Shown here: piece after piece, positions 2,300 to 59,845 of the stretch
Layout of the letters: each line of letters opens with the position of its first letter
Position numbering within the stretch: the first letter of the stretch is position 1
Assembly (NCBI RefSeq): GCF_030144855.1
Contig: NC_082719.1
Span: 42,346,001 to 42,410,000, forward strand
Source: Hypanus sabinus
Lineage: Eukaryota
DNA length: 64,000 bases
Direction of reading: 5' to 3'
Notes under the pieces: generated by a model
The model's database searches: none
Told to the model about the DNA's origin: nothing
What the model saw: the letters and a program-made list of their open reading frames with translations, nothing else
Made by a program: the position numbers and the translations under genes

Positions 2300-2695
2300 A
2301 TTAGTTCATTATTGTCACATATACCGAGTAACAGAGAAAATCTGCAGATGCTGGAAATCTGAAGTCCTGAAGAAGGGTCTGGGCCTAAAACGTTGACTGC
2401 TTACTCTTTTCCATAGATGCTGCCTAGCCTGCTGAGTTCCTCCAGTATTTTGTGTATATTGCTACAGAGAAAAATGTTGTTTGCACGTCATCCATACAGA
2501 TAATTTCATCACATCGTTACACTGAGGTGGTACAAGAGAAAACAGAATGCAGAAGAAAGCCTTACATTTGCAGAGAAAGTGCAGTGTAGACAGATGGTAA
2601 GACCAAAACAAGGTACCTTATGAAGTCTTATTGCTCTGTACTACTTCCACAAAATAACCAATTTCATAACATATGCCAATGAGAATAAAACTGTT
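2300..2695 (-). mobile_element. Rex1/Babar LINE 3' tail fragments (host of the Penelope mini-insertion)
   Basis: ttattgtcacat...cagagaaagtgcagtg matches the tail at 56770-56980. Confidence 0.6.
2331..2463 (-). mobile_element. Penelope-like pLTR mini-insertion with internal inversion and a decayed hammerhead
   Basis: Terminal ~30 nt of the pLTR on the - strand (2331-2361) joined to the rest on the + strand (2363-2463). ACAGAGAAAA is duplicated at 2331-2340 and 2464-2473. Ribozyme remnant agtc-CTGAAGA-agggtctgggcct-AAAA-cgtt-gact. Confidence 0.85.
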
Positions 2696-4747
2696 ACAAA
2701 TTTTAGAAGAACAATAACAGAAATGGCAAATTAAATATTACATATCAGGAATGAATTAGGGTACTTTCATAGGAAAGGAAGAGAGAAGCAGTATAAATTT
2801 AGTGTAAATTGAGGTATACAATGGGAAAGGAAAAGGAAGATTGTAAATGGCTGGAAGTGGTAGGATTAATTGACAGGGCTAATAAAAAGCAAATAGATTT
2901 CTAGCCTTAGTAAATAAAGTCACAGAGTTCAGAAGGTTGGAGATTATGCTGAACTTTTCTATAGCTGGTATATGAATACAGTGGAGTACAAGGCTATATG
3001 TTTCCCTGAAAGAGAGAATAGTGCAAAACATGACAACTCACAATCTTATTGCCTCAGTAATGTTTTTATGTCCTGGGAAAAAGTTTGGCTACCCTTTCCT
3101 TGTCCTACTTCAGAAACACCCTGAAGTTGATGGGTTCCCAGCATTGCGTTAACCTCCCTAGACATAACCTTCATATTCATCCAGTACAGGACAATATGAA
3201 ATCCAGGGTGACAGGGTTTCAATTATGTAGAGAAAATTTAACAACTTGGATATTTGCTCTGCAGCAAAAAGTGCTAAGCGAAGATTTGACAGATGTGCCA
3301 ATAATCATGAAAGTTTTTTAAAAGGAACGAATTTAAGATAAACAGCCGAAGGAATGGAAGGAACTACTCTTCATAAAAGTAATCAGAATTGCATGATGAA
3401 AATAATGATTGAAGTAACTACATCAGTTGTTATAAAAAGATAATAGGACAAACACTTGAAAGCTGCAAAAATTGGATGTAAAGAGAACATTTCAGATTTA
3501 GATTTATTTACCTCAGGTGTTTTGAAACATACAGTGAAACTTGTCAGTTGTGTTAACAACCAACACACCCAAGGATGTGCTGGGGGAAGCCGCAAGTGTC
3601 GCTTCACATACTGGTGCTAATATAACATGGCCAGAGTAGCATAGAACACAACGAAACAGAATATACTAAGCGACAAATCAACAACACCCACACCAGCCCC
3701 TTTCCTCCCTCCCACCCACACTCCCACATACATTTACATCCTCTGTGGTCTTATAGTAGAAAGTTGGAGCAAACCCAATGGGCCAAATGACCTAATTCTG
3801 TTCTTATGTCTTATGGTCTTATGGACCATTCTTTCAGCCTCCAGTGGACGTGTGAATTCACAGATATTGGGACTTCTGCTTCCCCAGCAGACTAACAGAC
3901 CTTCACAGACTTGGGGATATGTCCATTGAGCCTCAACATCTGGACTTTAAATCAACCATTAGGCTTCAATCTGGACTTCCAATTGCCCTTTGGGCTTCAG
4001 TCATCAGTATCAAACCAAGACTTGCTAATGACAATGAGTGAGTACCCTGGGTAAAAACCCAAACTCCAGGCCACAAAGTCCAGACTCACTGTTCACATAC
4101 ACTGTTGCTTTTGCCTCCTACCTTCATAGAACTCCGATCCCAGAATACACCAACATCTCCTCGTCTGCTGACCCAACGTCTGACCACATCCCTGTTCTTG
4201 CTCTTTGAATGTGGAGCAGAGGCTTAGATTCTAGAATGTCCTCTAATTCCTCCATATCCTTGTTCCTAAACCCTAATTCTCCTCTCTGATCCCAAAACAT
4301 GCCTTTCATCTTAAAGAAATCTAAAATAAAGAGAAGGACAGTGGGATTAATCCAACTCATGTTTCAAGGAATTGGCACAGGCACAATGGGATTGGATACT
4401 TCCTTCTTTCCTGTTTTATTCCATGATTCCTCTGATGGAAAATATTTGCTGTTTACATGTGGATAAATCAAGAATTTAATCTATGGATTTAAAATTGCAC
4501 ATTTAATGTTAAGGATCTCTGGTCTTGAACACCATGTCCTTCAAAAGGATCTCTTTACTGAGAGCATGATTGCAATCCAGTTTAATATTTAGCTGCCAAG
4601 ATAAATGGAAAATAATTACTTACTAGTTTTTAACTGTGGTTTTAAATGTTACTAATTCAGTAAATTTAGGATGGGAAAAGTCGGTTGAAACTTGCATGTT
4701 CTAAATTTCATCTCAGGTTAATATTGGAGTTCTGAACAGGCATTGGA

Positions 4748-4945
4748 CGGCTGGTGGTGCAGTGACATCAGCGCCAGACTCCAGAATGGAGTTTCCTGGA
4801 TTCGATTCCAGTCGGGCCATTCCCTAGTGAATGAGTGAATGAGTGCCTTTGAAAAAATAAAGAAAAATACTGCAAAGTGTCTGGTGAGGAGTGGAGCGCT
4901 ACAGTCTTTCATTCCGTGCATTGTAAGGCATGAACATGCCTGACG
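4748..4945 (+). mobile_element. tRNA-derived SINE
   Basis: A-box-like TGGTGCAGTGA and B-box-like GATTCGATTCC at tRNA spacing, followed by a non-tRNA body. Confidence 0.55.
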
Positions 4946-5269
4946 CTGGCCTTTCTGGCCTGAATCAACATCATCATCAAACAGGAATATTCTGCCATAC
5001 TCAACATATACACAGGCCAAATACCTGTTCAAAATTGATTCTCAGAATGTCTTTTCACCACCCAATCCAAATTAGTGTTCATTAAAAGATAAGTAAATGT
5101 CAAAATTATGTCGATTTCACATTCTTTTTATATCTGGAATGCTGCTAAAAGCAATCCAATTCTTCACTTAGAATTTGCTGGTGTGGGAAAATTTAAGATT
5201 CATAAAAGAAGGAGAAAAGCAGAATAGAAAAGTGATGATGTTTATGCTACAACCCTGTGCTCCCCATAG

Positions 5270-11660: not shown

Positions 11661-11699
11661 TATTGTTGTGACACCATGTTCAACTCCCATGATGGAAAA

Positions 11700-11830
11700 T
11701 CAGAAAGCTGCAGGTGCTGGAAATGAGAAACAATAACAGACAGAACTAGAAGGAATCATCAGATCAGTCAGCACCAGTGTAACGTAAAACAGAGTTACTA
11801 CCTTTATGTTGAAGCCCCATCATCAGAACT
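11700..11830 (-). mobile_element. Old Penelope pLTR with a hammerhead relic
   Basis: ctgcaggtgctggaaat tail. The - strand reads AGTT-CTGATGA-tggggcttcaacat-aaag-gtagt-AACT. Confidence 0.55.
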
Positions 11831-12527
11831 AAGAATTGAGTAATGAATAGGTTCTGAGTAAAGAGAGAGTGGAAGAAGGTGAGTGGGACAAATTGAGTTC
11901 TTCACCAAAGTGCTCGGAGCTCACAGGAAAGATAAACAAGGCATTGTTGAGTATTCTTTCACAGAACAACATAACCAACGTTGAAGGCCCAACTTTACTG
12001 AATGTATTCACCCTATCTACATCCCTCTTAGTTCTATACACCTCTGCTGGAGTATGTAATTCATACACCCAAGACTAGATTCATGAGGCACTCTGATTTA
12101 TACTTTGTCAGAATAAGTGATTCCCAGGCAAACAGAGGTGACTTAAGTTGTGAGTTCAGAGCCTCCTCGAAAAATTGACAAATGCCCTGGTGCAAACCAT
12201 TGTTGAAGGTGAATTCTAGATAGCTTTGACAACTTTGAGATATAGTGGCTTATTGAGAAAGGCAGGAGGAATGCATTACTTCACAACTAAAATGGCAAGG
12301 AAATAATCCTCAGTGTCGATGGGCTGCTTACGACGAAAGGAAACAAACATAATGAAACTGATAATCCAACATTAAGCTGTATTCTTGAGAAACTTTGATA
12401 AGAATTGATAAAAATGTCCTGAGCTCTGAATTATAGAGGGCCAGAATTTCTTCACTAGCCTTCTGAAAGGAAATGATCAAATATTTCAGGTATGCTAACA
12501 AACATTTGTAACATTATCATTGAAATT

Positions 12528-20690: not shown

Positions 20691-21929
20691 GCATGTTGCT
20701 TCCTCTCCCCTCCACACCAATGTCGGCATGGCTGGTGTCAATGTACTCCACTGGAAAAACACTTTCCAACTCCATCAATACAACAGCAGTGAGCTCCCAC
20801 TGTGTGGGTAATTCTGAATAAAGTGAAACAGGAATAAGGGAGAGGGGCTCAGGAATTCCTGCTTTCAGCACTTGGGCCAAGTGATTGCAGAATTGGCAGT
20901 GGGGTTCTTTAAATAAACTGGGTAAAGGATTTTCTGTAGTACTGGGTTCCATGACGGGATCATTGACAATTAGTCATCATGTGATTAAGTGTCACATGAG
21001 CAGGTCTCTCATGATCAGACCTCCGCGGCTGGCAACAAGAACAAAAGGCTCACTCCACACCAGAAGTGCCAACAGTACCACATCAGGCATCTTTCATCTC
21101 TCAAAGTCTCTTGGTTACAAAACTTGTGAGTCATTGTCATTGCTGTAGGAAATGTTTTCCGATGTGTCTATGTTTGATAGATGGTAAGTAGCTTGTGACC
21201 GATGGAAATGGAAATAATTTTGTAAATGCTCAGCTTCTGCAAGTGGGAGGACAAATGTTTTCTGTCAGATTTCTACCTTCTAAAGAAACTTCACAGAGAT
21301 CCACTTTCAGAAGTGCTACAATGAAGTGCTTGGGATGTCCCAGGTGACATGCAATGCACAGTGTGAAACCTAGTGTTTCTTTTCTTTTATGTCTGCTGTT
21401 TCTATTTTCTGTACACTTTCTATTCTGTTACTGAATCTTCTGTATATATTATTTATACCACACATAAGAAAACAATCAGATGAAGGGATAAGTTTTGAGG
21501 TACATTATTATTCATTTTGAATTTAGATCGATCGCAGCTCCAGCTACGTTGGGTGCTAGTTAACCCTTTGCTGAGTTGTGCTACAGTAACATAAAACCTA
21601 ACTTAACAAGACAGATAACACAAAGCTCACTCAAAGTTGAGTTTTAAAAAGTGTTATAAAGAAGGAAAGCGAAATAGCAAGGCAAAGAGGTTGAGCATTT
21701 CAGAACTTCTAGCAGGTGAAAACTTAGTCACCAAAGATAATAATCAGAAATGTAAAAGGATAACTTCACAAAAACATGAATATTATTACCATAATAATAA
21801 GTTAGGTTGTCTTCTGGTGCAGGACTAATGCCTGTGAAGGCTCTGAGTAGACTCAATTTCATATCCCATCACAACATAAACAAAACAATCTTAGCACTGA
21901 TGGACGCCAAATGTATGTAAATATCCTCA

Positions 21930-22210
21930 GCACAAGAGATTCTGCAGATGCTGTAAATTTTGAGAAACACACACAAAATACTTACAGAACTCAGCAGGTC
22001 AGGGATGGGGAAATAAACAGTCGACGTTTCAGGCCTAGACCCTTCATCAGGATTGGAAAGGAAAGAGGCAATAAGAAGGTAAGAGTGGGGAAGCAGTGCA
22101 AGCAGGCAGATGATAGGTGAGACCAGGAGGGGGGAAGATGGGTGGGTGGGGGAGGGGAAGTAAAGTAAGAAGCTGAAAGGTATTAGATCTAAGAAGTAAA
22201 GGGCTAAATT
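21930..22210 (-). mobile_element. Penelope-like element 3' end (pLTR)
   Basis: Same pLTR and purine-rich segment as 57839-58250. Confidence 0.85.
22018..22055 (-). ncRNA. Minimal type I hammerhead ribozyme, intact core
   Basis: RNA CAAUC-CUGAUGA-AGGGUCUAGGCCU-GAAA-CGUC/GACUG has both core boxes, stem II, stem I (4 of 5 bp) and a GUC cleavage triplet. Confidence 0.75.
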
Positions 22211-23260: not shown

Positions 23261-26009
23261 AGTGCTATAAGTGGTGGTCTACCTTTACGTTAATCAGATA
23301 CTCACAATGACAATAAGCCAAACTAGCAGATTTTAATTTAGCAGCTGTTCAATATTACAACAAATTTTTCTAAAAATCAATTAAATATGAATTACAATGT
23401 CATTTCCTTTGCTGACATATTAAGTGATTAGGGCCCCAGTCTTGTTAATAAGTAAGACTCGATCATGAAAAATAAGTGGATGGTATGGTTTTATTAATCT
23501 AATGAGCTCATTGACTGTAATGACAGCGCTCTGACAGACTAATACCAGCTTGTTTGCAAAAGTAAAAGGGAGAAAATGGAAATATTCCAGCAATCTGAAA
23601 TGAAAGCCTCAAATGTTGAAAACACAGAAGTAGTCAATGGATACACACAAAGTATTGACTCGAGTGCAAATCAAGTTCCAATGAAACTTTCCTGAAACAT
23701 TATTCTGTAATCTTTTTAACAGTTAGGAATAAACTTAATGGGAGCAAAACTGACCGACCCTCTACCTGTGCTTTGGAGATAGCTATTTTCACTCCCCATA
23801 AGTTAACTCATAACTGTGAAAAGAAATAATAAGTTAATGATACAGTTCAAATTTCACTGATTTATTTATATAACCATATAACAATTACAGCATGGAAACG
23901 GGCCATCTCTGCCCTTCTAGTCCGTGCCGAAAAAATTTGCACTTAAACAGATATTCTTTTTACGTGTACTGATTATTTCACATCTCATTACAGTACCTGA
24001 TGGTTCTTTTTCAATGGCTATATCCATTTGACCCATTGTGACAAGTAGCTAATTGTATTTGTAGGCAACCTCCACTTTTTCAATGGCTGATTAACTGGGA
24101 CTAGAAAAAATACTGGGAGTAATTTGACAACCAAACCTCACTTTGGTGGTTTGAGTTTGGGAAGCTGAACATGTAAGAGAGAACATGCCGGAGGATTTTC
24201 GGACAATGCTCAAAAACCCTTATTAGAAGATGAGAAGAGAAAAAGAGGCATCCCATTCCCAGAAAGGAGATCAAGGAAGCCCTTAAAACTCATATTCAGG
24301 AAGCAGCAGGGAAAGTCAGTGCCAGTAGAGTAACTGTTGGATAGAGATGCAGCACAAGGAAGAAGCAGCGGATGGGGGTCAGGTGTTTCAATACCAAAGT
24401 TATAGACCTGTATAACCCAGCTTCCCAACTCCCACCATCCTGGATCTTCTATTGACTCACAAGTTGCAGATGATGTAAGAATACACTCTCCACTTTCTCC
24501 TTCGGCACCCCTAATTCAACAGCGTGCAAGAATGAAAACCTCCGTAGTCAAAGGAGGAAAGGCAAGAAGACACTAAAGAAGATGAACACCTGATCCTACA
24601 CTGCGAACTTAGATATAGACACTGCACCACATCCACAAAAACTCTAAAAGCCTATATAATTGCACCTGTATAATAAAATAAATAATTCAGAAATAAACCT
24701 GTTACTCACATTGGATAGTCTTTATGTGGCAGTGTTGAGGGATAGATTATGCCACTTTCTCCAGGATCGTTGATGCAAGTTTAGTTCAGTCCATGGGCAG
24801 GAGTGTGGAAAGGCATAATGGCAAAGGTGGATTCACATTAACATTACACATGTCACTGCTCTACATACCATAAACGGTTGTTGGGTACACATGCAAACTC
24901 TTTAATGAGGCGGACAGCTTCCATACTTCTCATCAGAAATGTGTGTATAAATCTCAACCCCGCCCCCATTTCAGAGTGTCACATGGTTGAATTTCAACAG
25001 TGTATTTGTTACATTTTCTGCATCAACCAATAAAATGATTTCTTTTCAGGCATCAGTTGCACAGTTTGCCTGAAAGCTCATTGAGATATGGCACATAGTA
25101 CATCTGTGATAAAAACCTCCAGCCTGGCTATATTAGTCATTTTCTGGTCCACATTTGTCCATTGCACTCTGGAAATGCATTCACCCAGCACACACAATCA
25201 TGTCATGTCAGTGTGTACATTTCTGAAAGTTTAATAGGTGAGAGTCCATTATGCAAACCAACCTCCCATTCATTGACTCCATTTACATTTCCTGCTGCCT
25301 TGGGAAAGCAGCTAACATGGTCAATGAATCATTCTACCCCATACATGCTCTCTTCTCCCCTTGCTGTTGAAAAGAAGAAAAAGGCATGAGTGCAGGAGCC
25401 ACCAGATTAAAGGACAGCTACTATTCCACTGTTAGACCATAAAACCATTTGACAGAGGAGCACAATTAGGCCATTTGGCCCCACTAAATCTGCTCAGCCA
25501 TTCCATCATGGCTGGTTTATTATCACTCTTAATTCCATTCACCTGCCTTTTCCCCATAACATTTGATGCCCTGATTAATCAAGAACCTATCAACCTTAAA
25601 TATATCCAATGATTTATCCAATGTCACAACCGTCTGTGACAATGAATTCAACAGATTCACCCCCTCTGAAAATTTTCCTCAGCACTGTTCTAAATGGATG
25701 CATTTCCCCCTATTCTGAGGCCGTGCCCTTTGGTCCTAGACTCCACCATTATAATAAACATTCTCTCCACATCCACTCTATCTATGCCTTTCAATGTTTC
25801 TCCTCATCCACCCACCCCCTATTCTTCTAAACTGCAAGTACAGGCCCAGTATCATCAAAAACTCCTCATATGTTAACACGTTCATTTCTGGGATCATTCT
25901 CGTGAGCCTCCTCTGGGCCCTCTTTAATGTCAGCATATTATTTCTTAGGTAAGGGTCTCAACACTGTTCGCGATACCCCAAGTGTACTCTGACCAATACC
26001 TTCTAAATC

Positions 26010-27281
26010 ATAGTAACACACTCAAAATACTCAACAGGCTAGGCAGTATCCATGGAAAAGAATAAGCAGTCGACATTTTGGGCCACGACCCTTCATCTGG
26101 AAAATAAGATTAGAATCCAGAGTAAGAAGGTGGGGAAGGAAACGAAGAAGTACAAGGCAATAGATGAAACCAGGCCAGTGGGAGGGGTGAAGTAAAGAGC
26201 TGGGAAGTTGATTTATATAGGCATCCGTTAGTCTCGTGAGACCATGGATTTGCACCTTGGAAGGCTTCCAGGATTGTATGGGAGTCTGGCAGTTGCCCAA
26301 GCTGCAAGCCTTCCCCTCTCCACACCACCAATGTTGTCCAAGGGAAGGGCATTAGGATCCAAGCAGCTTGGCACCGGTGACGTCGCAGAGCAATGTGTTG
26401 TTAAGTGCCTTGCTCAAGGACACAAACACGCTGCCTCAGCTGAGGCTCGAACCATGACCTTCAGGTTACTAGTTCAATGTTTATCCACTAGGCCACACGC
26501 CAACACAGTTGATTAGTGAAAGCAATAAAGGGCTGGAGAAGTGGGTATCTGATAGGAGAGGACAGAAGGTCATGGAAGAAAGGGTAGGGGGAGGAGCACT
26601 AGAAGGAGTTGATGGGCAGGTACGGAGATAATGCAAGAGAGGGAAATGGGAATGGGGATTAGTGAAGGAAAAAGTGGGGAAAGAAATTACCAGAAGCTCA
26701 AGAAATCGATGTTCATGCCATCAGTTTGGACGCTACCCAGACAGAATATTACTCCACCAACCTTAGAGTGGACTCATCGTAGCAGTAGAGGAGACTATGG
26801 ACTGACATGTTGGAAAGGGAATGGGAAGTAGAATTGAAATGGGTGGCCACTGGGAGATCTCATTTTTACTGACAGACAGAGTGTAGATGCTCGGTGAAGT
26901 GGTCTCCCTATCTACGTTGGGTATCATTGATATACAGGAGGCCACACCGTGAGCACCGGATACAGTAGACGACCCTAATAGACTCCCAGGTAAAGTGTCG
27001 CTTCACCTAGAAGGACTGTTTGGGGCCCTGAATGGTAGTGAGGGAGGAAATGTAGGGCAGGTGTAGCACTTGTTCTACATGCAAAGCTAAGTGCCAGGTG
27101 GGAGATCAGCAGGGAGGGATGAATGGACAAGGGAGTCGTGTAGGAAGAGATCCATGTGAAAAGCAGAAAGTGGGGTGGAGGGAAAGATGTGCTTGTGATG
27201 GGTTTTCACTTTGGGTCAGGGGTATCCATTTTGTGTATTACTTTGTTTTTCATCATCTGCAGATTTTCTCTTGCTTGTGGT
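26010..27281. mobile_element. Penelope-like insertion: inverted ~1.2 kb body (GIY-YIG region and pLTR on -) plus pLTR terminus on +
   Basis: 26010-27205 is colinear with about 57865-58790. Decayed hammerhead at 26067-26099. 27225-27277 is the pLTR end in the opposite orientation. Confidence 0.85.
26214..26506 (-). mobile_element. tRNA-derived CORE-like SINE
   Basis: A box TGGCCTAGTGG, B box GGTTCGAGCC, core gtgtccttgagcaaggcactt. 8-bp TSD AGTTGATT (26206-26213 / 26507-26514). Confidence 0.8.
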
Positions 27282-30353: not shown

Positions 30354-31055
30354 TGTAAAGGGGGTTTCTTTTTTTTTCTTTGTTACTGTTGGGAAAGGGT
30401 TTCCTTTTGTTAACTAGCAGGAATGCTAATTTACTGATAACGAGAATGGTATTCCTTTCTAAACCAAGTGGAGATTAATGTTCTTTCTTCTGAGTCTGTA
30501 AGCTTTTGTTGACGGGCTTTTGGGCAGATCGGCGCGAGGGGGTCGAGAGAGAGGACGCAATGCTCTAAGCTGGGCGAGGATCGGACCCCAAAGGGGGGTC
30601 CGAGGCCGGGAGATTCTCCGAGGAGGGGGGGGATGACGCTAGATGTGCTTGGTTGACCACTCGGAGGGTCCTGAGCTGTTTGGAGAGTCGAGGAGTTCGG
30701 AGGGTCCTGAGCTGTTTGGAGAGTCGAGGAGTTCGGAGGGGATCGAATGGTGGCCAGAAGACTTCAGTAATTGAGCTCCAATGGTTGTGCACGAAGTGGT
30801 TTGGACTTTGATAAGTTTGGCACCTTTTCTTTAATTTTCTCTTCATATATACTGTATCGTTATTAATCACTTAGTTATAGTAACCTTTATAAATTGTACT
30901 CATTTAATCGCATGTGGTGTACTGTCTGGTTTTGGGCGAGGCGGGGACATCACACAGCATCCACACCAGCTGATTACCCAGTTTGGCGGGGCCGAAGGCT
31001 GCTCCCCCTAGACAAGAATGAGCTGAGCGAGCCTGAGGCGACCCAGGGAGTTACA
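30354..31055 (+). mobile_element. Solo LTR (Gypsy-like)
   Basis: TGTAA...TTACA termini and 4-bp TSD GGTA (30350-30353 / 31056-31059). Internal 36-bp tandem duplication at 30661-30740. Strand is tentative. Confidence 0.85.
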
Positions 31056-31166: not shown

Positions 31167-31440
31167 GATGTTGACACATCTGGCAATGTATACCGAAGTC
31201 TATTGTTTTGATGTTGACACATCTGGCAATGTATACCGAAGTCTATTGTTTTGATGTTGACACATCTGGCAATGTATACCGAAGTCTGTTGTTTTGATGT
31301 TCACACATCTGGCAATGTATACCGAAGTCTGTTGTTTTGATGTTGACACATCTGGCAATGTATACCGAAGTCTGTTGTTTTGACGTTGACACATCTGGCA
31401 ATGTATACCGGTCTGTTGTTTTGACGTTGACACATCTGGC
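31167..31440. repeat. 43-bp minisatellite, about 6.4 copies
   Basis: Unit GATGTTGACACATCTGGCAATGTATACCGAAGTCTRTTGTTTT at 31167, 31210, 31253, 31296, 31339, 31382 (41 bp) and 31423 (partial). Confidence 0.97.
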
Positions 31441-33594: not shown

Positions 33595-34375
33595 CCTGTG
33601 CCCCTACACCTCCTTCCTCACCACCATTCAGAGCCCCAAACAATCCTTCCAGGTGAGGCAACACTTCACCTATGAGTCTGTTGGGGTCACATACTGTATT
33701 TGGTGCTGTTGGTGTGGTCTCCTGTAATTGGGGAGGCCTGACATATATTGGGAGACCGCTTCACCGAGCATCTACACTCCATCTGCCAGAATGAGCAGGA
33801 TCTCCTAGTGGCTGCCGATTTTAATTCCGTTTCCCATTCCCATTCCGATATGTCCATCCATGGTCTCCTCCACTGTCGTGATGAGGCCACACTTAGGCTG
33901 GAGGAACAACACCTTACGTTCCGTTTGGGTAGCCTCCAACCTGATGGTATGAACATTGATTCTCAGATTTTCAGTAATGCCACCCCCCTACTGCCTTCAC
34001 CATTTCCCATCCCCTTTTCCTTCTCTCATGTTATCTCCTTACCTGTCCATCACCTCCCTCTGGTGCTCCTCCCCCACCCTTTTTCTCTTTCTTCAATGGC
34101 CTTCTGTCTTTCACCAATCAACTTCCAAGCTCTTTGCTTCATCCCTCCCCCTCCAAATTTCACCTAGAGGCTGGTGTTTCTCTCTCCACCGCCCCCCCCC
34201 CATCCCGCAACCTTTCAAATCTACTCCTCAGCATTTTTTCCTTCAACCTGCCGAAGGGTTTCGGCCCGAAATGCCAACTGTGCTTTTTTTCCATAGATGC
34301 TGCCTGGCCTGCTGAGTTCCTCCAGCATTTTGTGTGTGTTGCTCGGATTTCCAGCATTTGCAGATTTTCTCTTGT
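33595..34375 (+). mobile_element. Penelope-like element 3' part: GIY-YIG endonuclease remnant plus pLTR with hammerhead variant
   Basis: GDRFTEHLHSI..FNS.SHSHSDMSIHGLLHC..LEEQHL.FRLGSLQPDGMN. CTGCCGA-agggtttcggccc-GAAA at 34248-34271. Confidence 0.9.
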
Positions 34376-34509
34376 CTATGCTGTATTTGTCCTATTTTCG
34401 ATGTAGAAGTCAGAAAAAAAGTGTGGGAGGAGGGGAAGGAGCAAGGGTGGCGGGTGACAGGTGAACCCTGGACCTGGTTTCTCAAGGCTGCTAACACTGA
34501 GACTTATGA

Positions 34510-34632
34510 AACAAATCAAAAAGCTGCAGATGCTGTAAATCTGAAACAGAAACTGCTGGAAACGTACAGCAGGTCGAGCAGCATCCATGTAGGGAAAATC
34601 AGTTAACATTTTAGGTCCGGGACGCTTTGTCA
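34510..34632 (-). mobile_element. Divergent Penelope pLTR, convergent with the preceding one
   Basis: ctgcagatgctgtaaat tail and a decayed hammerhead (tgacaa-agcgtcccggacct-aaaa-tgtt-aactg on -). Confidence 0.65.
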
Positions 34633-34774
34633 ATTTTGACTTACCTCAGCAAACATCCGAGTACAGTATCAGAGAAACTGATGTCTCATCAAAGGTTCCT
34701 CTTCTAGGTTCACCAAGAAGGCCAAGTCTCTGCAGAAGTCTCTGAACAGCTACAACCAACATATCACCTGCGGA

Positions 34775-36390
34775 ATCAGAGGTGTCAACACACTTCTATC
34801 AAGGACACTTACCAAGAGGATGAAGTCTTGCAAAGTGGCAAGCTCAGATAGTATACCCGGTAGGGCAGTGAAAACCTGTGCAAACTGGCAGGTGTATTCA
34901 AGGGCATCTTCAATCTCTCACTGTTGCAGTCTGAGGCTTCCACCTGCTTCAAAAGGGTGCCAATAATACCAGTGCCCAAGAAGAACAGGATGAGCTCCCT
35001 CATTGACTATTGACCAGTTGCACACACATCTACTGTGACAAAATACTTTGGTTGGTCGTGGTCAGAATCAACTCCAGTCTAAGCAAGGACCTGGACCACT
35101 GCAAACAAGAGGAAATCTGCAGATGCTGGAAATCCAAGCAACACACACAAAATGCTGATGGAACTCAGCAGACCAGGCAGCATCTCCAGAAAACATCAGT
35201 GTCAACATTTCAGGCTGAGACCTGCCTACTTCCACAGTATGTCTACAGTGGATGCAATCTCACTGGCCATCCACTTACCCTAGAATCAATAGCAATATGT
35301 ATGTCAGGCTGCTGTTTGTTGATTACAGCTCGGTGTTCAACACCATCATACCCTCAGTACTGGTCAATATGCTCCAAAGCCTGCACCTCTGTACCTCCCT
35401 CTGTAACTGGATCCTCAGCTTCCTCATTGCGAAACCACAGTCAGTGCAGATCAGAAAATATCTCCTCCTCATTAACAGTCAATATTGGTGCCCCTCAAGG
35501 ATGCATGCTTAGCCCACAGCTCTACTCTCTCTGAACCATGACTGTGTGGCTAGGCACAGCTAAATCACCATCTTTGAATTTGCCGATGACACAAGTATTG
35601 TTGGCAGAATTTCACATAGTGACAAGGAGGCGTACAGGAGTGAGATACATTGGCTGACTGAGTGGTGTCACAATAACAAACTTGCACTCAATATGATTAA
35701 GGAATTGGTTGTGGACTTCAGGCAAGAAAGTTGAGGGGACTGACACCAGTCCTTATTTTGGGGATCAGGAGTGGAAAGGGTGAGCTGTTTTAAATTCCTG
35801 GGTTTCAACATCTCTGAAGATCTATCCTGGGCTGCCAGTACAAAGAAGGCAAGACAGTGGTTATATTTCATCAGGAGATTGAAAAGACTTGGTATGACAA
35901 CAAAGACTCCTACAAATTTCTACATTTGTGCGATGGAGCACATTTTAATTGATTGCATCACCAGCCAGTATGGAAGGGGCTGGAAGAGACAGTTGAAGGT
36001 TGTGAACTCATTCATCTCCATCATGAGTACTAGCTCAGCATCAAGGACATCTTCAAAAGGCAATGACTCAGATAGGCAGCATCCATCAACCAAGACACAC
36101 AGCAACCAGGACATGGACTTTTCTCATTACTATCATCAAGGAGGAGGTACAGGAGCCTAAAGACACATACTCCACTCTTTAAGAACAGCTTCTTCCCCTC
36201 CACCATCAAATTTCTGAATGAACCCACATATTCTACCTCAATATTCTTTTGCTCTCTTATTGCACTACTTATTTTTATACATTTCTTATTGTAATTTATA
36301 GTTTTTTTTATTATGTATTGCAATGTACTGTTGCCACAAAACAACAAATTTCACAACATATGCCAGTGATGTTAAACCTGATTCTGAAGT
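34775..36390 (+). mobile_element. Rex1/Babar LINE RT-to-3' fragment
   Basis: [36 protein letters not shown] and FKFLG.NISEDLSW motifs. Confidence 0.88.
35105..35222 (-). mobile_element. Solo Penelope pLTR inserted in Rex1, truncated inside hammerhead stem II
   Basis: The - strand begins ggtctcagcct-GAAA-tgtt-gacac and runs to the pLTR end. Confidence 0.85.
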
Positions 36391-38065: not shown

Positions 38066-38089
38066 CTAAAAACAATGTACTCTCCATTT

Positions 38090-40384: not shown

Positions 40385-41390
40385 TAGATAGAAAGATAGA
40401 TACGTTATTGATCCCAAAGGAAATTACAATGTCACAGTAACATTACAAGTGTGCAGATATACAAATATTAGAAGAAAAGTAAGAAGAAAAAATAAGTTAT
40501 CTCGAACAGCCTAACAGGAGGGGGTCTTCACTTCCCCATCGACAGGGTGACTCATTATAGAGCCTAATGCCCGAGGGTAAGAATGACCTCGTCTAGTGCT
40601 CTCTGGAGCAGTGCAGTTGTTTTAGTCTAATACTAAATGTGCTCCTCTGTTCAGCCAAGGCGGCATGAAGAGAGTGAGAAACATTGTCCAGAATTGCCAG
40701 GATTTTCCATCGGGTCCTTTGTTCTACCACAGCCTCCAGTGTCCGGTTTGACTCCTATAACAGAGCCAGCCTTTCTAATCAGTTTGTTGTCCCTTCTGGC
40801 ATCACCAATGTTGATGCCATTGCCCCAGCACACCAAGGCATAGAAAATTGTACTGGCAACAACAGACTGGTAGAACATGTGAAAGAGAGGCCTGCATACT
40901 CCAAAGGACCTCAGTCTCCTCAGGAAGTAGAGGTGACTCTGGCACTTCTTGCACACAGCCTCTGTGTAGGTGCTCCACTCAAGTCTGTCATCCAGGTGCA
41001 CCTCCAGGTACTTGTAGGTCCTCACCACATCCACATCCTCACCATCAATAGTAACAGGGAGCAGTGCAAGTTTAGTCTTCCTAAAGTCCATCACCATCTT
41101 CTTTGCCTTGCTGATGTTGAGCTACAGATGATTCAGTTTGCACCATTTGACAAAGTCCTCCACCAGCACCCTGCATTTATCCTCCCGTCCTCCGTTTATA
41201 AACCCAACTATTGTTGAGTGATCAGAGAGTTTCTGCAGATGGCATAATTCAGTGTTGCATCCGAGGTATATAGGGTAAAACAGGAAGGAGCCAATACAGA
41301 CCCCTATGGGGCCCTATTGCTGCTTATAGCCATATCTGACGCACAGATCTGAAGCTGCACAAACTGTGCTCTACCAGTCAGGTAGCCCAC
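40385..41390 (-). mobile_element. Rex1/Babar LINE 3' fragment
   Basis: ORF MVMDFRK..YKYLEVHLDDRLEW..LYFLRRLRSF..FYQSVVASTIFYALVCWG and a (gata)n tail. Confidence 0.88.
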
Positions 41391-43269: not shown

Positions 43270-43410
43270 CAAAACTGCAGACGTTGAAATATGAAACAAA
43301 AAGCTGAAAGAACTCAGCCGGTTAAGCAACATATTTGAAAGAAAAACCAGTCAAATGTTGAGTTCTTCCGGCTTTTGTTGCTGTCACAAATTTCCAGCAT
43401 CTGATTTTTC
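43270..43410. mobile_element. Tail-out inverted pair of old Penelope pLTR ends
   Basis: ctgcagacgttgaaat..gaactcag on the left and gagttct..atttccagcatctg on the right. Confidence 0.55.
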
Positions 43411-52461: not shown

Positions 52462-52592
52462 GAGCAACAAAAAATCTGCTGGAAGAACTCAGTGGGTTGA
52501 GCACCATCTGTGGAAGGAAAGGAATTATCAAGGTTTCACGCTTCTCCAGCATCTGACTGTTGATTCAGCTTCTTGCTTCTGCAATCCCTTGT
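52462..52592. mobile_element. Tail-out inverted pair of Penelope pLTR ends
   Basis: tgctggaagaactcag..catctgtggaagg..gtttca on the left and ctccagcatctg..ctgcaatcccttgt on the right. Confidence 0.5.
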
Positions 52593-53381: not shown

Positions 53382-53435
<54 letters not shown>

Positions 53436-54251: not shown

Positions 54252-57200
54252 GAACATTTCAATGATGGGGCAAGTAAGTGTAGTTATCCCCTTTTATTCA
54301 AGAGCCTGATGTTTAAAGGGTAGTATCTGTTCTTGAACCTGGTGGCCTGATTCATGAGGCTCTTGTACCTCCTGCCTGATGACAGCCGCTAGAAGAGAGC
54401 ATAGCCTGGGTGGTGGGGATCTCTGATTATGGATGCTGCTTTCCCATGACAGTGTTTCATGAGGATGTGCTCAATGGTGGAGAGGGCTTTCCCCATGACG
54501 GACCCGGCCAAAAACATTACCTTTGGTAGGATTTTCTCTTCAAAGACTTTGGGATCTCCATACTTGCAGCCAGTCAATACACTCTCCACTACATATCTAT
54601 AGAAGTTTGTCAAAGTTTTAGATGGTATGCTGAATCTCCACTAACTCCTCAGGAAGTAGAGGTGCTGCTGTGTTTTCTTTGTAACTGCACTTACGTGCTG
54701 CGTCCAGAACAAGTCCTCTGAAATAGTAAAACCCAGGAATTTAAAGTTGCTGACCCTCTCCACCTCTGATCCTCCAATGAGGACTGGCTCATGGACCTCT
54801 GGTTTCCCTCTTCTGAAGTATATAATCAGTTCCTTGATCCTGCTGACATTGAGTGAGATGGTGTTTTTAAGACACCGCTCAAATTTTCAAGCTTCCTCCT
54901 GTATCCTGTTTCATCATTACATTTGATTCAGCCCACAACAGTGGTGTCATCCTCAAACTTGATTATGGCATTGGGGCTGAGCTTAGCTGCACAGATATAG
55001 GTGTAAAGTGAGTAGAGTAGGGGGCTAAGCACGCAGCCCTGTGGTCCACCTGTGTTGATGGAAATCATGGAGATGTTGTTGCCAATTCAAACTGACTGGG
55101 ATCTGCAAGTGAGGAAACCCAGGATCCAACTGTTGAAGGAAGCATTGAGGGCAAGGTCTTGGAGCTTACTGATTAGTTTTGAGAGGACGATGGTATTGAA
55201 TGCTGAGCTGTAGTCAAAGAGAATCCTAATGTATGCACCTTTGGTGTCCTGATGTTCCAGGGTTGAGTAACGAGTTAATGAGCTGGCATGTGCTGTAGAT
55301 TTGTTGCTCCGGTAAACAAATTGGAGCAGATCCAAGCCACCTGTCAGGCAGGAGCTGATATGTTTCATCACCAACTTCTCAAAACAGTTGATCACTATGG
55401 ATGTAAGTGCTGCTAGTCATTGAGACAGGCCACCATGCTTTCTTGGGCAATGGTATAAAAGCCTGCTTGAAGCAGGTAGATACCGCACACTGCCAATGTG
55501 AGAGGTTAAGGACCTCAGTGAACACACCAGCCAGTTGATCAACACAGGTCTTTAGTACATAGCTAGGTGCCCTGTCCAGTCAGATGTCACCTTCCTGAAG
55601 GTAGCTCACATGTCAGCTTTAGAGACTGAGATCATTGGATTATCAGGGAATGTGGGGGTTCATAATGGTTTCTCTATGTTCAATGGTCAAAGTGACCATA
55701 GAAGGCGGTGAGGTCATCTGGAAGCGAAGCCCTGCTATCACCCATGTTATAGGAGGTGATAGCATTCAAGCCCTGCCACAGCAGTCAGGTTTAATCTGGA
55801 ATTTCCTCTTCACCTGTGAGATTAATAACTGTAAAATATTCAATAGCAAAACAGTACATTATCCATCTTTTAATATATGCCAGTCCTGAGGAAATATTCT
55901 AGAAATTAAAAAGTTAATGTGAATCTCAAATTATATAATGCTAATAACGATGCCTTACCAATAGACGTGTTTATTGCTTTAATAATTTATTTCAATTCTT
56001 CAAGAGAGTTGGTTGTGGCAATGTTAAATTTATTCGAATTTTACCACTGACAAATTTCCATTATTGTCTAAATTTGTGAATTTGATCAGTCTAATATGAT
56101 GTTTCATGCATTTCAGTATAAAATTAGTGCCTAAATTAATGTGTAGTTATCTTTGCAAAGTCTCTGACCAAGGAATGGTCTTGACTTCTTTTTGAAGGCA
56201 TTCATGACTCTGATGTGCCTACAATGCTGGTTTTTAGCCAGTATCCTCAGGAGGTTTGACCACAAACACATTCCAGTAACATTAGTGGCACTTGGCATCT
56301 TGTTTTGTTTTGATACAAGTTCTATCAAGCATTCAGGCTCCAGAGGAATGTTCAGACCTGTATCAGTATTTAAGACTTTCTGATTGTTCCTGAGGTGGTG
56401 GGTATCTATAATCTTTTGTTGTTTACAGTACCTGCAGGCATCACACCTCTGTGAGTTTTTCATTGGAAACTTCCTCTGCATTTTCTCTTCCTGCTCAATT
56501 AACTCTCCAAGTTTTTGCAACCTCCATTCCATGTATGAAAATTAAGACTGAGTTGAGGCCCATGTGTAAAATTTCTCCTTGGGCTATAACAACAAAATCT
56601 CATTCTGATAGCTGGCTTCTCTGTTCCACCAGCAATGGATTGACAAATATTTCTTTAACCAGCTCAGCTTTCTCTCAACTAGATATCCTTTCATGCTGAG
56701 TAAATTAGGATGAAAGTCTTAAAGCGGAAGACCATCATGACTGTTCAAAGTAGATGGTGTGTTATGGATTTCAAATTAGCTTATTATTGTCACATGCAGT
56801 GAAAATACAGTGGAAAGCTTTGCTTGCTTGCTGTTGATATAGATCAGATCTTTGCACAGTACATAGAGGTAAAATAAGGTAAAACAAAGAAAGTGCAGAA
56901 TGAAGTGTAACAGCTACAGAGAAAGTACAGTGCCGGTAAACAATAAGATGCAAGATCATAACAAGGTACATTGTGAGGTCAAGAGTCCGACTTAAAACAC
57001 TAGGGAACTATTTAACAGTCTAACAGTGGGGTAGGAGCTGTTCATCAGCCTAGTGTTGGGTGTTTTCAGGCTTTTGTATCTTCTGCCCCATTGAAGTGGG
57101 GAGAAGAGAAAATGTCCAGGGTGGGGGAGATGTCTGATTTTGCTGGCTGCTTTACTGAGGCAGTGAGAAGTATAGACAGAGTACGTGGAGGGGAGGCTGG

Positions 57201-57838
57201 TCTCCAGGATGTGCTGAACTGCGTCCACAACTCTATGTAGTTTCTTGCCATCACATGCAGAACAAGCTGTACTGCATCCAGATAGCTCTCTGCGGAGACT
57301 TAATAAAAAATAGTAAGGGTCAATGGGGATATACCAAATTTCTTTAGCTTCCTGAGGAAGTATAAGCATTGGCCATGACCTTGATGTGGTTGGATCAGGA
57401 CAGACTACCGATGATGTTCACTCTTAAGAACTTGAAGTTCTCAAACACCTTGACCCCAACACAATTGATGTAGACAAGAGCATGTGCTCCACGCCCTTTT
57501 CTCAAGTCAGTGACTAGCCCTTTTGTTTTGCTGACATTGAGATAAAGTTTGATGTCATGGCAATCCATTGCTAAACTCTATCTCCTCCATGTACTCGGAC
57601 TCATTGTTACTTAAGGTATGGCCTAGACAATGGTATCATCTGCAAACTCGTAGATGGAGTTAGAGCAGAATGTAGCTGTGCAATCCTGAGTGTACAGGGA
57701 GTAGAGTAGGAGATTAATTGCTTAACTTTGTGAACCAAAGAATAATCATGGCAAAAGAGTTGCTGCCTCCTTTACTGATTGCAGTCTGTTGCTCTGGAAG
57801 TCAAGGATCTGGTTGCAGAAAGAGGCTCTGGAGTTTGG

Positions 57839-59845
57839 AAATCTGCAGATGCTGGAAATCCAAGCAACACATACACAATGCTGGTGGAACACAGCAGGCC
57901 GGGCAGTATCTATAGAAAGAACCACTGTCAACGTTTCTGGCTGAGACCCTTCGTCAGGACTAACTGAAAGAAAAGATAGTAAGAGATTTGAAAGTAGGAG
58001 GGGGAGGGGGAAATGCAAAATGATAAGAGAAGACCAGAGGGAATGGGGTGAAGCCAAGATCTGGAAAGCTGATTGGCAACAGGGATACAGAGCTGGAGAA
58101 GGGAAAGGATCATGGGACAGGAGGCCTCAGGAGAAAGAAAGGGGGAGGGGAGCACCAGAGAGATGGAGAACAGGCAGAGTGATGGGCAGAGAGGAAAAAA
58201 AATGGGAGGGGGGAAAATAAATAAATCAGGGATGGGGTAAGAAGGGGAGGAGGGGCATTAACAGAAGTTAGAGAAGTCAATATTCATGCCATCAGATTGA
58301 AGGCTACCCAGACAGTATATAAGGTGTTGTTCCTCCAACCTAAGTGTGGCTTCATTTTGACAGTAGAGGAGGCCATGGATAGACATATCAGAATGGGAAT
58401 GGGACGTGGAATTAAAATGTATGGCCACTGGGAGATCCTGCTTTCTCTGGCGGACAGAGCGTAGGTGTTCAGCGAAACAGTCTCCCAGTCTGCGTCGGGT
58501 CTCACCAATATATAAAAGGCCACACCGGGAGCACCAGACGCAGTATACCACGCCAGCCGACTCACAGGTAAAGTGTCACCTCACCTGGAAGGACTGTCTG
58601 GGGATCCGAATGGTGGTGAAAGAGAAAGTGTAAGGGCAGGTGTAGCACGTGTTCCGCTTACAAGGATAAGTGCCAGGAGGGAGCTCAGTGGGAGGGATGG
58701 GGGGACGAATGGACAAGGGAGTCGCGTAGGGAGTGATCCCTATGGAAAGCAGTAAGAGGAGGGGAGGGAAAGATGTGCTTGGTGGTGGGATCCCATTGGA
58801 GGTGGCAGAAGTTACAGAGAATTATATGTTGGACTCTGAGGCTGGTGGGGTGGTAGGTGAGGACAAGGGGAACCCTATCCCGAGTGGGGTGGCGGGCGGA
58901 TGGGGTGAGGGCAGATTTGCAGGAAATGGGAGAGATGCATTTGAGAGCAGAGTTGATGGTAGAAGAAGGGTAGCCCCTTTGTTTAAAAAAGAAAGACATC
59001 TCCTTCGTCCTGGAATGAAAAGCGTCATCCTGAGAGCAGATGCAGCAGAGATGGAGGAAATATGAGAAGGGGATAGCATTTTTGCAAGAGACAGAGTGAG
59101 AAGAGGAATAGTCCAGGTAGCTGTGAAAGTTAGTGTGTTTATAGTAGCTATCAGTAGATAGGCCGTCTCCAGAGATGGAGACAGAAAGATCAAGAAAGAG
59201 TAGGTGACAGAAATGGACCAGGTAAATTTGAGGGCAGGGTGAAAGTTGGAGGCAAAGTTAATGAAGTCAGCGAGCTCAGCATACGTACAGGAGGCAGCAC
59301 CAATGCAGTCATCGATGTAGCGAAGGAAAAGAGGGGGATGGATACCCGTTTAGGCTTGGAACATGGACTGTTCCACAAAGCCAACAAAAAGACAGGCATA
59401 ACTGGGACCCATGTGGGTGCCCGTGGCTACACCTTTGGTTTGGAGGAAGTGGGAGGAGCTTAAGGAGAAATTATTGAGAGTAAGAACTAATTCTGCTAGA
59501 CAGAGGAGAGTGGAGGTAGAGGGGAATTGGCTAGGTCTGGAATCCAAAAAGGAGTGGAGAGCTTTGAGACCTTCTTGGTGGAGGATGGAGGTATATAGGG
59601 ACTGGATGTCTATGGTGAAAATAAGGCGGTGGGGGCCAGGGAACTTAACATCATTGAAAAAATTCAAAGCGTGAGAAGAGTCACAAACATAGGTGGGAAG
59701 AGTTTGAACAAGGGGGGATGAAACAGTGCCAAGGTATGCAGAAATGAGTTCGGTGGGGCAGGAGCAAGCTGAGACAATGGGTCTACCTGGACAGGTAGAT
59801 TTGTGGATCTTGGGTAGGAGGTAGAAATGGGAAGTGTGGGGTGTG
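57839..59845 (-). mobile_element. Penelope/Poseidon-like retroelement, 5'-truncated (RT plus GIY-YIG plus pLTR), frameshifted
   Basis: FYLLPKIHK..PGRPIVS, TIDIQSLYTSI, QTKGVATGTHMGPSYACLF, YIDD (59319-59308) and VYCVWCSRCGLLYIGET. 9-bp TSD GGAGTTTGG (57830-57838 / 59846-59854). Confidence 0.95.
57925..57961 (-). ncRNA. Minimal type I hammerhead ribozyme (core intact, stems partly decayed)
   Basis: RNA AGUC-CUGACGA-AGGGUCUCAGCCA-GAAA-CGUU/GACAG. Confidence 0.65.

What the first reader, a model, noticed from the sequence alone, without database searches (positions are those of the whole stretch)
2363..57961. Family of ultra-minimal, probably dimer-dependent hammerhead ribozymes carried by Penelope pLTRs
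Seen: a ~38-nt motif recurs about 85-100 nt from the pLTR end at 2363(+), 11791(-), 22018(-), 26067(-), 34243(+), 34600(-), 35200(-, truncated) and 57925(-). Consensus RNA: CAGUC CUGAYGA A GGGU YUCG GCCC GAAA C G UC/GACUG. Established: CUGANGA...GAAA...UH is the hammerhead core, and Penelope-like elements are known to carry minimal type I hammerheads that can cleave as dimers. Unusual here: only two nucleotides (CG) separate A15.1 from U16.1, too few to close a monomeric stem III, yet A-C-G-U is a palindrome that could pair between two motifs. There is also an extra A between CUGAUGA and stem II. Inference: cleavage needs two motifs, for example tandem pLTRs or two transcripts. Most damage falls on CpG sites, so the ancestral motif was probably intact. 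I cannot tell whether this chondrichthyan variant has already been described.
Basis: partly seen in the sequence, partly recalled or inferred. Interest (0 to 1): 0.82.

Follow-up and report, generated by a model that had tools for sequence, protein, structure and literature searches.

The report
Decayed Penelope-element minimal hammerhead ribozyme relics
The repeated 38-nt motif is the already-described "minimal" hammerhead ribozyme found near the 3' end of Penelope-like retrotransposons, present here only as mutated dead copies, so it is an ordinary new example of a known kind.

Summary
A dispersed repeat has 13 fragments in the window, and its consensus carries CUGAYGA-A-GGGU/GCCC-GAAA-CG-UC flanked by AGUC/GACU. 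Contigs from three organisms, laid on one copy, give the same 3' half (TCTCGGCCCGAAACGTCGACTG).

The repeat is the 3' end of a Penelope-like element. Three copies continue upstream into a decayed GIY-YIG endonuclease ORF. One of them, 57837-59845(-), also keeps RT pieces and a Cx4CxxC linker, and has a 7-bp target-site duplication. Three insertions have inverted head-to-head partner fragments.

The two features called unusual are not unusual. Cervera & de la Pena 2014 list the missing helix III with palindromic 15.2-16.2 (A-CG-U) and the extra nucleotide between A9 and G10.1 as hallmarks of metazoan PLE min-HHRs, fish elements included, and proposed the dimer model. Lunse et al. later reported cleavage as dimers.

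No copy here is intact, and only two keep both core boxes. There is no tandem pair, no covariation and no Rfam hit. Nearest-neighbour energies do not favour the active dimer. The HHR is no better conserved than the 100 nt downstream of it.

The scan has noted the same family on at least seven other pieces of this genome. Verdict: a real feature, a new member of a known kind, of low interest.

The parts
57837..59845 (-). 5'-truncated, decayed Penelope-like element. RT pieces at 59353-59877 and 58688-59349, Cx4CxxC linker at 58579-58821, GIY-YIG EN at 58261-58575, then a 3' UTR of about 420 nt. It is inserted into a LINE RT and flanked by a 7-bp TSD AAACTCC (59846-59852 and 57830-57836).
   Evidence: RVT_1 E 4e-4; GIY-YIG E 0.019; atlas 0.95-0.96 to eukaryotic GIY-YIG / RVT_1 clusters; TSD
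57925..57962 (-). HHR relic with both core boxes intact (CUGACGA, GAAA). The triplet is GUU, the 10.1-11.1 pair is broken (C>A) and helix I has one mismatch. The predicted cut lies between 57930 and 57929.
21905..22177 (-). Copy of the PLE 3' region without ORF homology upstream. It contains the best-preserved HHR.
22018..22055 (-). Best-preserved HHR relic. All core positions are intact (CUGAUGA..GAAA..GUC). Helix II has two G.U pairs after CpG decay and helix I has one C.A mismatch. The predicted cut lies between 22023 and 22022.
   Evidence: 57.9 bits
33563..34381 (+). 5'-truncated PLE copy: C-terminal half of the EN domain plus the 3' UTR. The HHR relic at 34243-34280 has A6>C and U16.1>C.
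25996..27205 (-). 5'-truncated PLE copy (linker/EN remnant plus 3' UTR), interrupted by an unrelated insertion of about 330 nt near 26230-26560. The HHR relic at 26067-26104 has U4>A and G12>A. A head-to-head inverted 3'-end fragment lies at 27228-27281(+).
2331..2464 (+). Short copy starting at the HHR 5' edge (HHR 2362-2399, G12>A). It is directly preceded by an inverted 32-nt 3'-end fragment at 2331-2362(-).
34518..34641 (-). Short 5'-truncated copy. The HHR relic at 34600-34641 is heavily damaged (C3>U, G8>A, G12>A, indels).
35100..35237 (-). 5'-truncated copy. Only the 3' half of the HHR is recognisable (35204-35223). It has the best-preserved 3' module.
11702..11836 (-). Very diverged family member. 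Of the motif at 11791-11832 only CTGATGA survives.
   Evidence: not found by the model
43272..43407 (.). Head-to-head inverted pair of short 3'-end fragments: 43272-43354(-) and 43356-43407(+). The forward arm begins within about 2 nt of the predicted cleavage site.
52463..52546 (-). Short diverged fragment with a partial HHR 3' half.

Best explanation
These are old, neutrally decaying insertions of a Penelope-like retrotransposon. The RT-Cx4CxxC-GIY-YIG layout suggests the Neptune type. Most insertions are 5'-truncated, so what recurs is the element's 3' end.

That 3' end ancestrally encoded a type-I 'min-HHR' of the kind described for metazoan PLEs. It has a helix I of 4-5 bp (AGUC/GACU), the CUGAYGA box, one unpaired A, a 4-bp helix II (GGGU/GCCC with G10.1-C11.1), the GAAA box, no helix III (A15.1-C-G-U16.1) and cleavage after GUC.

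By inference from published work, in active elements the ACGU palindromes of two motifs pair to form a shared helix III. The two motifs would come from tandem units on one transcript or from two transcripts. The result would be a domain-swapped double hammerhead, probably helped by the element's own protein or a chaperone, that cuts multimeric PLE RNA about 100 nt before the 3' end. In this window every copy is a mutated relic and none is expected to be active.
For: Shown here:
- The repeat is a real family.
- The consensus and the per-copy parse match the min-HHR.
- An independent family-wide consensus of the 3' half, and T at U16.1 in 90% of depth, come from contigs of three organisms.
- An RT, linker and GIY-YIG ORF lies upstream of the motif in three copies.
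- One copy has a 7-bp TSD and 5' truncation.
- Three insertions form head-to-head inverted pairs, a PLE hallmark according to PMC8557442.
- The HHR plus the downstream 100 nt are better conserved among copies (0.71-0.78 pairwise identity) than the upstream 3' UTR (0.40-0.67).

From the literature:
- The same architecture and the dimer model are published for PLEs, including fish Xena, Neptune and Poseidon (PMC4209133).
- Dimer cleavage is cited in PMC6765202 and PMC6466107.
Against: No copy is intact, and only 2 of 8 keep both boxes. There are no compensatory changes in either helix, and helix I is paired in only 60% of cells.

No Rfam hammerhead model matches, even at E<=10. This is expected for a motif that lacks helix III.

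ViennaRNA gives the double hammerhead -19.9 kcal/mol, against -21.0 for two open monomers and -29.0 for two rod-like monomers in which G5-G8 pair with C15.2-C17. An inactive extended duplex reaches -37.3.

The window holds no tandem pair. The HHR is not better conserved than the 3' module downstream of it. Published PLE min-HHRs cleave poorly in vitro, and an Anolis one needs protein and is dispensable for TPRT.
Confidence: 0.85

Rival explanations
1. The ribozyme is protein-assisted rather than strictly dimer-dependent. The PLE RT/EN protein or a host chaperone binds the 3' region and holds a single motif, or a loosely paired one, in an active fold. Tandem motifs would not be required.
For: In the Anolis Poseidon element the HHR showed no cleavage without protein. 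It did cleave with protein, including EN-dead protein, and C3/G8 mutants abolished that cleavage (PMC11167929). Min-HHR dimers cleave only weakly in vitro. Here the energy model gives the double hammerhead no advantage.
Against: A single chain cannot close A15.1-U16.1 across a 2-nt CG 'loop'. Conservation of the ACGU palindrome in the consensus is what the dimer model predicts. The two ideas are not exclusive.
Confidence: 0.3
2. The motif is conserved as part of a structured 3' module recognised by the RT for target-primed reverse transcription, not for cleavage. The hammerhead resemblance would then be inherited baggage, or a 'parasite' of the PLE.
For: The 100 nt downstream are at least as well conserved as the HHR. 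One 54-nt bin (34294-34347) is 28-45 times deeper in laid contigs. A long-range stem AGAUGCUG/CAGCAUCU appears in the best-kept copy (z -2.2). HHR mutants do not affect TPRT in vitro, and no RNA-seq ends fall at the cut site in Anolis. Craig et al. suggest that HHRs may simply parasitise PLEs.
Against: All 13 core positions plus both helices are present in the consensus, and that is far more than an RT-binding stem would need. The depth contrast is partly an artefact: the CpG-rich HHR loses exact 31-mers quickly, and local alignments are clipped at indels (loose ends).
Confidence: 0.15
3. Most short copies do not come from the autonomous PLE. They come from a non-autonomous derivative (SINE-like or retrozyme-like) consisting of HHR plus 3' module, mobilised in trans.
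For: Several fragments start at or near the 5' edge of the HHR (2361, 34640, 35237). The abundance is very high: 248,446 contigs of one DNA run were laid on 1.6 kb. The 2026 preprint derives vertebrate non-LTR retrozymes from PLE pLTRs, including one chondrichthyan.
Against: Three of the four long copies run into the EN ORF, so ordinary 5' truncation explains much of the pattern. No tandem HHR array, which defines retrozymes, occurs here. There are too few copies for a statistical test.
Confidence: 0.25
4. The resemblance to a hammerhead is due to chance.
For: The two core boxes alone are expected 0.5 times per shuffled window, against 2 observed.
Against: Both hits lie at the homologous position of one repeat and carry helices I and II, the bulged A and the ACGU palindrome. 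They sit exactly where PLE HHRs are known to lie.
Confidence: 0.01

Closest known systems
Metazoan PLE min-HHR (Cervera & de la Pena 2014, PMC4209133; dimer cleavage Lunse, Weinberg & Breaker 2016/17)
   Same: Type I topology, helix I of 4-5 bp, CUGANGA, one unpaired nucleotide between 9 and 10.1, the G10.1-C11.1 pair, GAAA, no helix III or loop 3 with palindromic 15.2-16.2, and a GUC triplet. It lies in the terminal non-coding repeat of an RT+GIY-YIG element, is very abundant, and occurs mostly as solitary copies from truncated elements.
   Different: Helix II is only 4 bp here, against 6-8 bp in the Schistosoma and Drosophila families. The host is apparently a cartilaginous fish, and I found no explicit published description for such a host. 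All copies in this window are decayed.
Anolis Poseidon PLE (PAc) hammerhead (PMC11167929)
   Same: A vertebrate PLE HHR with stems I and II only. Activity depends on factors beyond the single RNA.
   Different: In PAc the HHR overlaps the ORF start. Here it lies about 300 nt after the stop codon and about 100 nt from the 3' end. PAc belongs to the Poseidon clade, whereas the Cx4CxxC linker here points to Neptune.
Double-hammerhead RNAs with short helix III (newt satellite 2, ASBVd; Forster et al. 1988, as cited)
   Same: Helix III is too short for a monomer, a palindromic sequence allows an intermolecular helix III, and activity is expected only in multimers.
   Different: Those keep 1-3 bp plus a loop in helix III and tertiary loop-loop contacts. 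Here helix III is reduced to the bare ACGU.
Vertebrate non-LTR retrozymes (PMC7229834; bioRxiv 10.64898/2026.07.22.740005)
   Same: Type I HHRs related to PLE pLTRs, non-coding, and found in non-mammalian, non-avian vertebrates.
   Different: Retrozymes are tandem arrays with at least 2 HHRs. The window has only dispersed single copies.

Membership tests
PLE min-HHR (Cervera & de la Pena 2014) | Catalytic boxes CUGANGA and GAAA, and a U16.1-H17 cleavage triplet | tested here: met
   Met in the consensus. Box 1 is intact in 22018, 57925, 2363 and 11791. GAAA is intact in 22018, 57925, 34243 and 35200. The family-wide contig consensus reads ...CCCGAAACGTCGACTG, and 90% of depth at U16.1 is T. 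Only 2 copies keep both boxes.
PLE min-HHR (Cervera & de la Pena 2014) | Helix II closed by G10.1-C11.1 | tested here: met
   GGGU/GCCC in the consensus, with 92% of cells paired in six copies. The closing pair is G-C in 2 copies, G.U after CpG decay in 3, and broken in 1.
PLE min-HHR (Cervera & de la Pena 2014) | [quoted passage not shown] | tested here: met
   An A is present in all six aligned copies (columns 16-17 invariant).
PLE min-HHR (Cervera & de la Pena 2014) | No helix III or loop 3; positions 15.2-16.2 palindromic | tested here: met
   A-CG-U in the consensus and in 22018, 57925 and 2363. The other copies read A-TG-U through CpG decay.
PLE min-HHR (Cervera & de la Pena 2014) | Open helix I of about 4-5 bp (type I) | tested here: met
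   AGUC/GACU, plus a fifth C/U-G pair, in the consensus. Only 60% of cells are paired in the decayed copies.
PLE min-HHR (Cervera & de la Pena 2014) | Lies in the terminal repeat (pLTR) of an element encoding RT + GIY-YIG | tested here: inconclusive
   The position in the 3' non-coding end downstream of the RT/linker/GIY-YIG ORF is shown for three copies. A direct-repeat (pLTR-ORF-pLTR) arrangement is not present in the window.
PLE min-HHR (Cervera & de la Pena 2014) | Compensatory changes in the helices across family members | tested here: inconclusive
   0 pairs with changes on both sides among six copies, no better than shuffles. The copies are dead relics and too few; a genome-wide set is needed.
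PLE min-HHR (Cervera & de la Pena 2014) | Site-specific self-cleavage, as a dimer | not testable with these tools
   Only contigs were available, with no raw RNA reads, so no molecule ends could be seen (table 6: none). The energy model is neutral to unfavourable.
Rfam hammerhead families (Hammerhead_1, _3, HH9, HH10, _II) | Score at or above the family's gathering threshold | tested here: not met
   No match at gathering over the whole window. No hammerhead match even at E<=10 around the two best copies. These models expect a helix III hairpin.
Penelope-like element (EN+; Neptune-type) | RT followed by a C-terminal GIY-YIG endonuclease in one ORF, with a CX2-5CxxC linker (Neptune/Nematis) | tested here: met
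   The pieces are colinear on one strand: RVT_1 (E 4e-4, below Pfam's cutoff), then C-KRNT-C-YT-C, then GIY-YIG (E 0.019, below cutoff). Atlas feature scores are 0.95-0.96 to eukaryotic RVT_1 and GIY-YIG clusters. The ORF is broken by stops and frameshifts, so each hit is weak on its own. Clade assignment by the linker motif is an inference from PMC8557442.
Penelope-like element (EN+; Neptune-type) | Insertion architecture: 5' truncation, TSD, and an inverted 5'-truncated partner abutting the 5' end | tested here: met
   A 7-bp TSD AAACTCC flanks 57837-59845. Head-to-head inverted pairs occur at 2331-2362/2361-2464, 43272-43354/43356-43407 and 25996-27205/27228-27281.
Non-LTR retrozyme | Tandem array with at least two consecutive units, each carrying an HHR | tested here: not met
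   TRF finds no such array. All copies are dispersed.

The most novel reading that the evidence does not exclude
The HHR plus the 100-nt 3' module might be the unit of a hyper-abundant, transcribed, non-autonomous retroposon shared by many related (apparently elasmobranch) species. If so, its 5' ends and inversion junctions would cluster at the 5' edge of the ribozyme or at the GUC cleavage site. That clustering would be a genomic footprint of PLE hammerhead folding or cleavage in vivo, something RNA-seq has so far failed to show.
Probability: 0.12. Interest if true: 0.5.

Novelty: new member of a known kind. Interest (0 to 1): 0.15.

Why it matters
It matters little beyond annotation. It adds what appears to be a cartilaginous-fish lineage to the hosts in which PLE 3' ends carry the helix-III-less hammerhead. 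It also shows that the family is extremely abundant and shared across many related species.

The function of PLE hammerheads is still an open question: cleavage of tandem transcripts, protein-assisted processing, or mere hitch-hiking. A genome with this many copies could provide the covariation and 5'-end statistics needed to address it. This window alone cannot.

Tried and rejected
- Rfam at gathering over the whole window, and at E<=10 around the two best copies, gave no hammerhead hit. This is uninformative, because the models require helix III.
- An exact pattern with a strict helix II gave 0 hits because every copy is mutated.
- Pfam on the ten longest ORFs found only ALKBH8_N remnants belonging to LINEs. 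The PLE ORF was found only after following the homology upstream.
- PDB sequence searches with the RT and EN pieces gave nothing meaningful.
- Lunse et al. (PMC5785218) is not held in the library, so its content is cited second-hand.
- No raw RNA reads exist for these organisms in the service. Only contigs were laid, so the cleavage-end test was impossible.
- The 'opposite strands' joints 34331-34344 / 35134-35137 are contigs switching between two paralogous copies at the same consensus position. They are not real inversions.
- The 4-kb spacing of the same-strand copies 22018 and 26067 was checked as a possible pLTR-ORF-pLTR unit and rejected, because no EN homology lies upstream of the 22018 copy.
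- The window copies show no covariation.

Full report

Yes. At each stated coordinate the sequence carries a recognisable version of the motif. A self-comparison and an nhmmer profile show that the motif is embedded in a dispersed repeat with 13 fragments in the window:
- Four long copies: 34107-34399+, 57837-58084-, 21905-22177-, 25996-26223-.
- Six shorter copies: 35100-35237-, 2361-2464+, 34518-34640-, 11702-11836-, 52463-52546-, 43272-43354-.
- Three small 3'-end fragments: 27228-27281+, 2331-2362- and 43356-43407+.

A covariance model built from six motif copies, with helices I and II annotated, was run with filters off. It recovers those six at 45-58 bits and the truncated 35200 copy at E 0.07, and nothing else in 64 kb below E 2. 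The 11791 site belongs to the family through its flanks, but its motif is almost erased.

I obtained independent support by laying contigs of two DNA runs and two probable RNA runs, from three organisms, on 33700-35300 at 80% likeness. Thousands of clipped contigs give the loose-end consensus TCTCGGCCCGAAACGTCGACTGTTTATTC. At 34274, where this copy has C in place of U16.1, 90% of the depth reads T.

The cleavage site lies about 100 nt from the common 3' end...CTGCAGATTT(T/C)CTCTTGT.

The CpG statement is about half right. In the five best copies, 17 of 32 changes hit the ten CpG positions and 13 of them are CpG transitions. That is 34% of CpG cells changed, against 11% of other cells.

**2. 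What is it?**

Homology of three long copies continues upstream of the repeat into a decayed ORF. The copy at 57837-59845(-) shows the following parts, colinear on one strand:
- RT pieces, with weak RVT_1 (E 4e-4) and motifs such as LPKIHK, RPIVS and RYIDD. Recognising these as PLE-like rests on my own knowledge.
- A C-x4-C-x2-C linker.
- A GIY-YIG domain (VVYCVWCSRCGLLYIGET...), with Pfam E 0.019.
- A stop codon, then a 3' UTR of about 420 nt containing the motif.

The protein-atlas feature search puts the EN piece at 0.95 with eukaryotic GIY-YIG clusters and the RT piece at 0.96 with eukaryotic RVT_1 clusters. An RT followed by a C-terminal GIY-YIG endonuclease defines EN+ Penelope-like elements. 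The CX2-5CxxC linker is the mark of the Neptune and Nematis clades (PMC8557442).

This copy is inserted into a LINE reverse-transcriptase gene and is flanked by a 7-bp target-site duplication, AAACTCC. Three insertions have an inverted 5'-truncated fragment abutting their 5' end, and the same paper describes this as typical PLE architecture.

So the Penelope assignment is right. However, what recurs is the 3' end of 5'-truncated insertions. No pLTR-ORF-pLTR unit and no tandem HHR pair occur in the window.

**3. The ribozyme parse**

The consensus reads, in order:
- Helix I 5' strand (C)AGUC
- C3-A9 = CUGAYGA
- One unpaired A
- Helix II GGGU-CUCG-GCCC
- G12-A14 = GAA
- A15.1, C15.2, G16.2, U16.1
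- C17, followed by the cut
- Helix I 3' strand GACU(G)

Every conserved core position is present. A single chain cannot close A15.1-U16.1 across two nucleotides. Two motifs, however, can pair ACGU with ACGU and swap their helix I strands, which gives a nested double hammerhead.

Copy 22018-22055 keeps all core positions. Copy 57925-57962 keeps both boxes but has GUU and a broken 10.1-11.1 pair. All the others have at least one core mutation.

**4. Comparison with what is known**

Cervera & de la Pena 2014 (PMC4209133) defined this same 'min-HHR'. Their descriptor has no helix III or loop 3. [quoted passage not shown]

They found such motifs in the terminal repeats of all PLEs then available, including the fish Xena, Poseidon and Neptune elements. 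Most occurred as thousands of solitary copies from truncated elements. They proposed dimeric action and saw only weak cleavage of dimeric constructs. Lunse, Weinberg & Breaker reported that such PLE-associated variants cleave as dimers (cited in PMC6765202 and PMC6466107; the paper itself was not available).

A 2026 preprint surveys PLEs and HHR retrozymes in vertebrates, including one chondrichthyan, using a minimal type-I model. I found no paper that explicitly describes this family: only one paper holds 'hammerhead ribozyme', 'Penelope' and 'shark' together, and there 'shark' refers to the shape of the motif. This is why I class it as a new member of a known kind rather than as already known.

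**5. Evidence bearing on function**

- Among the window copies, mean pairwise identity is 0.71-0.74 across the HHR. It is 0.72-0.78 across the 100 nt downstream and 0.40-0.67 in the upstream 3' UTR. The HHR therefore belongs to a conserved 3' module of about 135 nt, but it is not the best-conserved part.
- In the laid contigs, the bin 34294-34347 is 28-45 times deeper than its neighbours. Part of this contrast is technical: the CpG-rich HHR loses exact k-mers, and alignments are clipped at indels.
- Helices I and II show no compensatory change in six copies. That is expected for dead copies and is uninformative.
- ViennaRNA energies do not favour the active dimer. The double hammerhead scores -19.9 kcal/mol, two open monomers -21.0, two rod-like monomers in which G5-G8 pair with C15.2-C17 score -29.0, and an inactive extended duplex -37.3. 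This fits the poor in vitro activity reported for min-HHRs. It also fits the finding that an Anolis PLE hammerhead cleaves only with the element's protein, is dispensable for target-primed reverse transcription, and leaves no RNA-seq ends at the cut site (PMC11167929).
- Only contigs were available for these organisms, so in vivo ends could not be examined.

**6. Abundance and spread**

One DNA run placed 248,446 contigs on the 1.6-kb stretch at 80% likeness or better, and the probable RNA runs placed 8,086 and 24,462. Runs labelled with about 20 different organism codes hold 20-43% of the sampled 31-mers of one 293-nt copy. The family, or at least its conserved 3' module, is therefore very abundant and shared across related species. 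Presence in RNA-like runs does not show autonomous transcription.

The scan's first-stage readers noted the same family on at least seven other pieces of this genome.

**7. Verdict**

The feature is real and was correctly recognised as a Penelope hammerhead. Its 'ultra-minimal, dimer-dependent' character is the published norm for metazoan PLEs, and every copy here is a relic.

The only less ordinary lead is that several short copies and inversion junctions begin at the edge of the ribozyme, and in one case (43354) within about 2 nt of the predicted cut. With so few cases this is anecdotal and needs genome-wide statistics.

Noticed in passing
window 34290-34375 (+), 35100-35200 (-): The 100 nt between the HHR cut site and the 3' end is the best-conserved part of the family. 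The bin 34294-34347 is 28-45 times deeper than its neighbours in laid contigs. In the best-kept copy a long-range stem AGAUGCUG/CAGCAUCU encloses a small hairpin (MFE -31 kcal/mol, z -2.2). It is a candidate RT-recognition element.
   Followed up: partly
window 2331-2464; 43272-43407; 25996-27281: Three head-to-head inverted pairs occur, each an inverted 5'-truncated 3'-end fragment abutting the 5' end of a forward copy. In 2331-2464 the junction sits at the 5' edge of helix I. In 43272-43407 it sits within about 2 nt of the predicted cleavage site.
   Followed up: partly
window 59846-60300 and 57760-57836 (-): A LINE reverse-transcriptase remnant (...IPSKFITKL | ...FCNQILDFQSNRLQS) is split by the PLE insertion, with a 7-bp TSD AAACTCC. 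ALKBH8_N-type (PF09004) remnants at 40651-41097(-) and 35771-36160(+) probably belong to LINEs of the same kind.
   Followed up: partly
window 26230-26560 (-): An insertion of about 330 nt interrupts the 26067 PLE copy between its EN remnant and its 3' UTR. Part of it looks like a tRNA-derived SINE (...GGTTCGAGCCTCAGCTGAGGCAG...).
   Followed up: no
window 31167-31440 and 30661-30740: There are two near-perfect tandem repeats unrelated to the PLE: a 43-bp unit in 6.4 copies at 97% identity, and a 36-bp unit in 2.2 copies at 100%.
   Followed up: no
consensus HHR (e.g. window 22018-22055): The predicted monomer MFE is a rod in which G5-A6-Y7-G8 pairs with C15.2-G16.2-U16.1-C17. This sequesters the core and the cleavage site, and could be an 'off' state that competes with the active fold.
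   Followed up: partly
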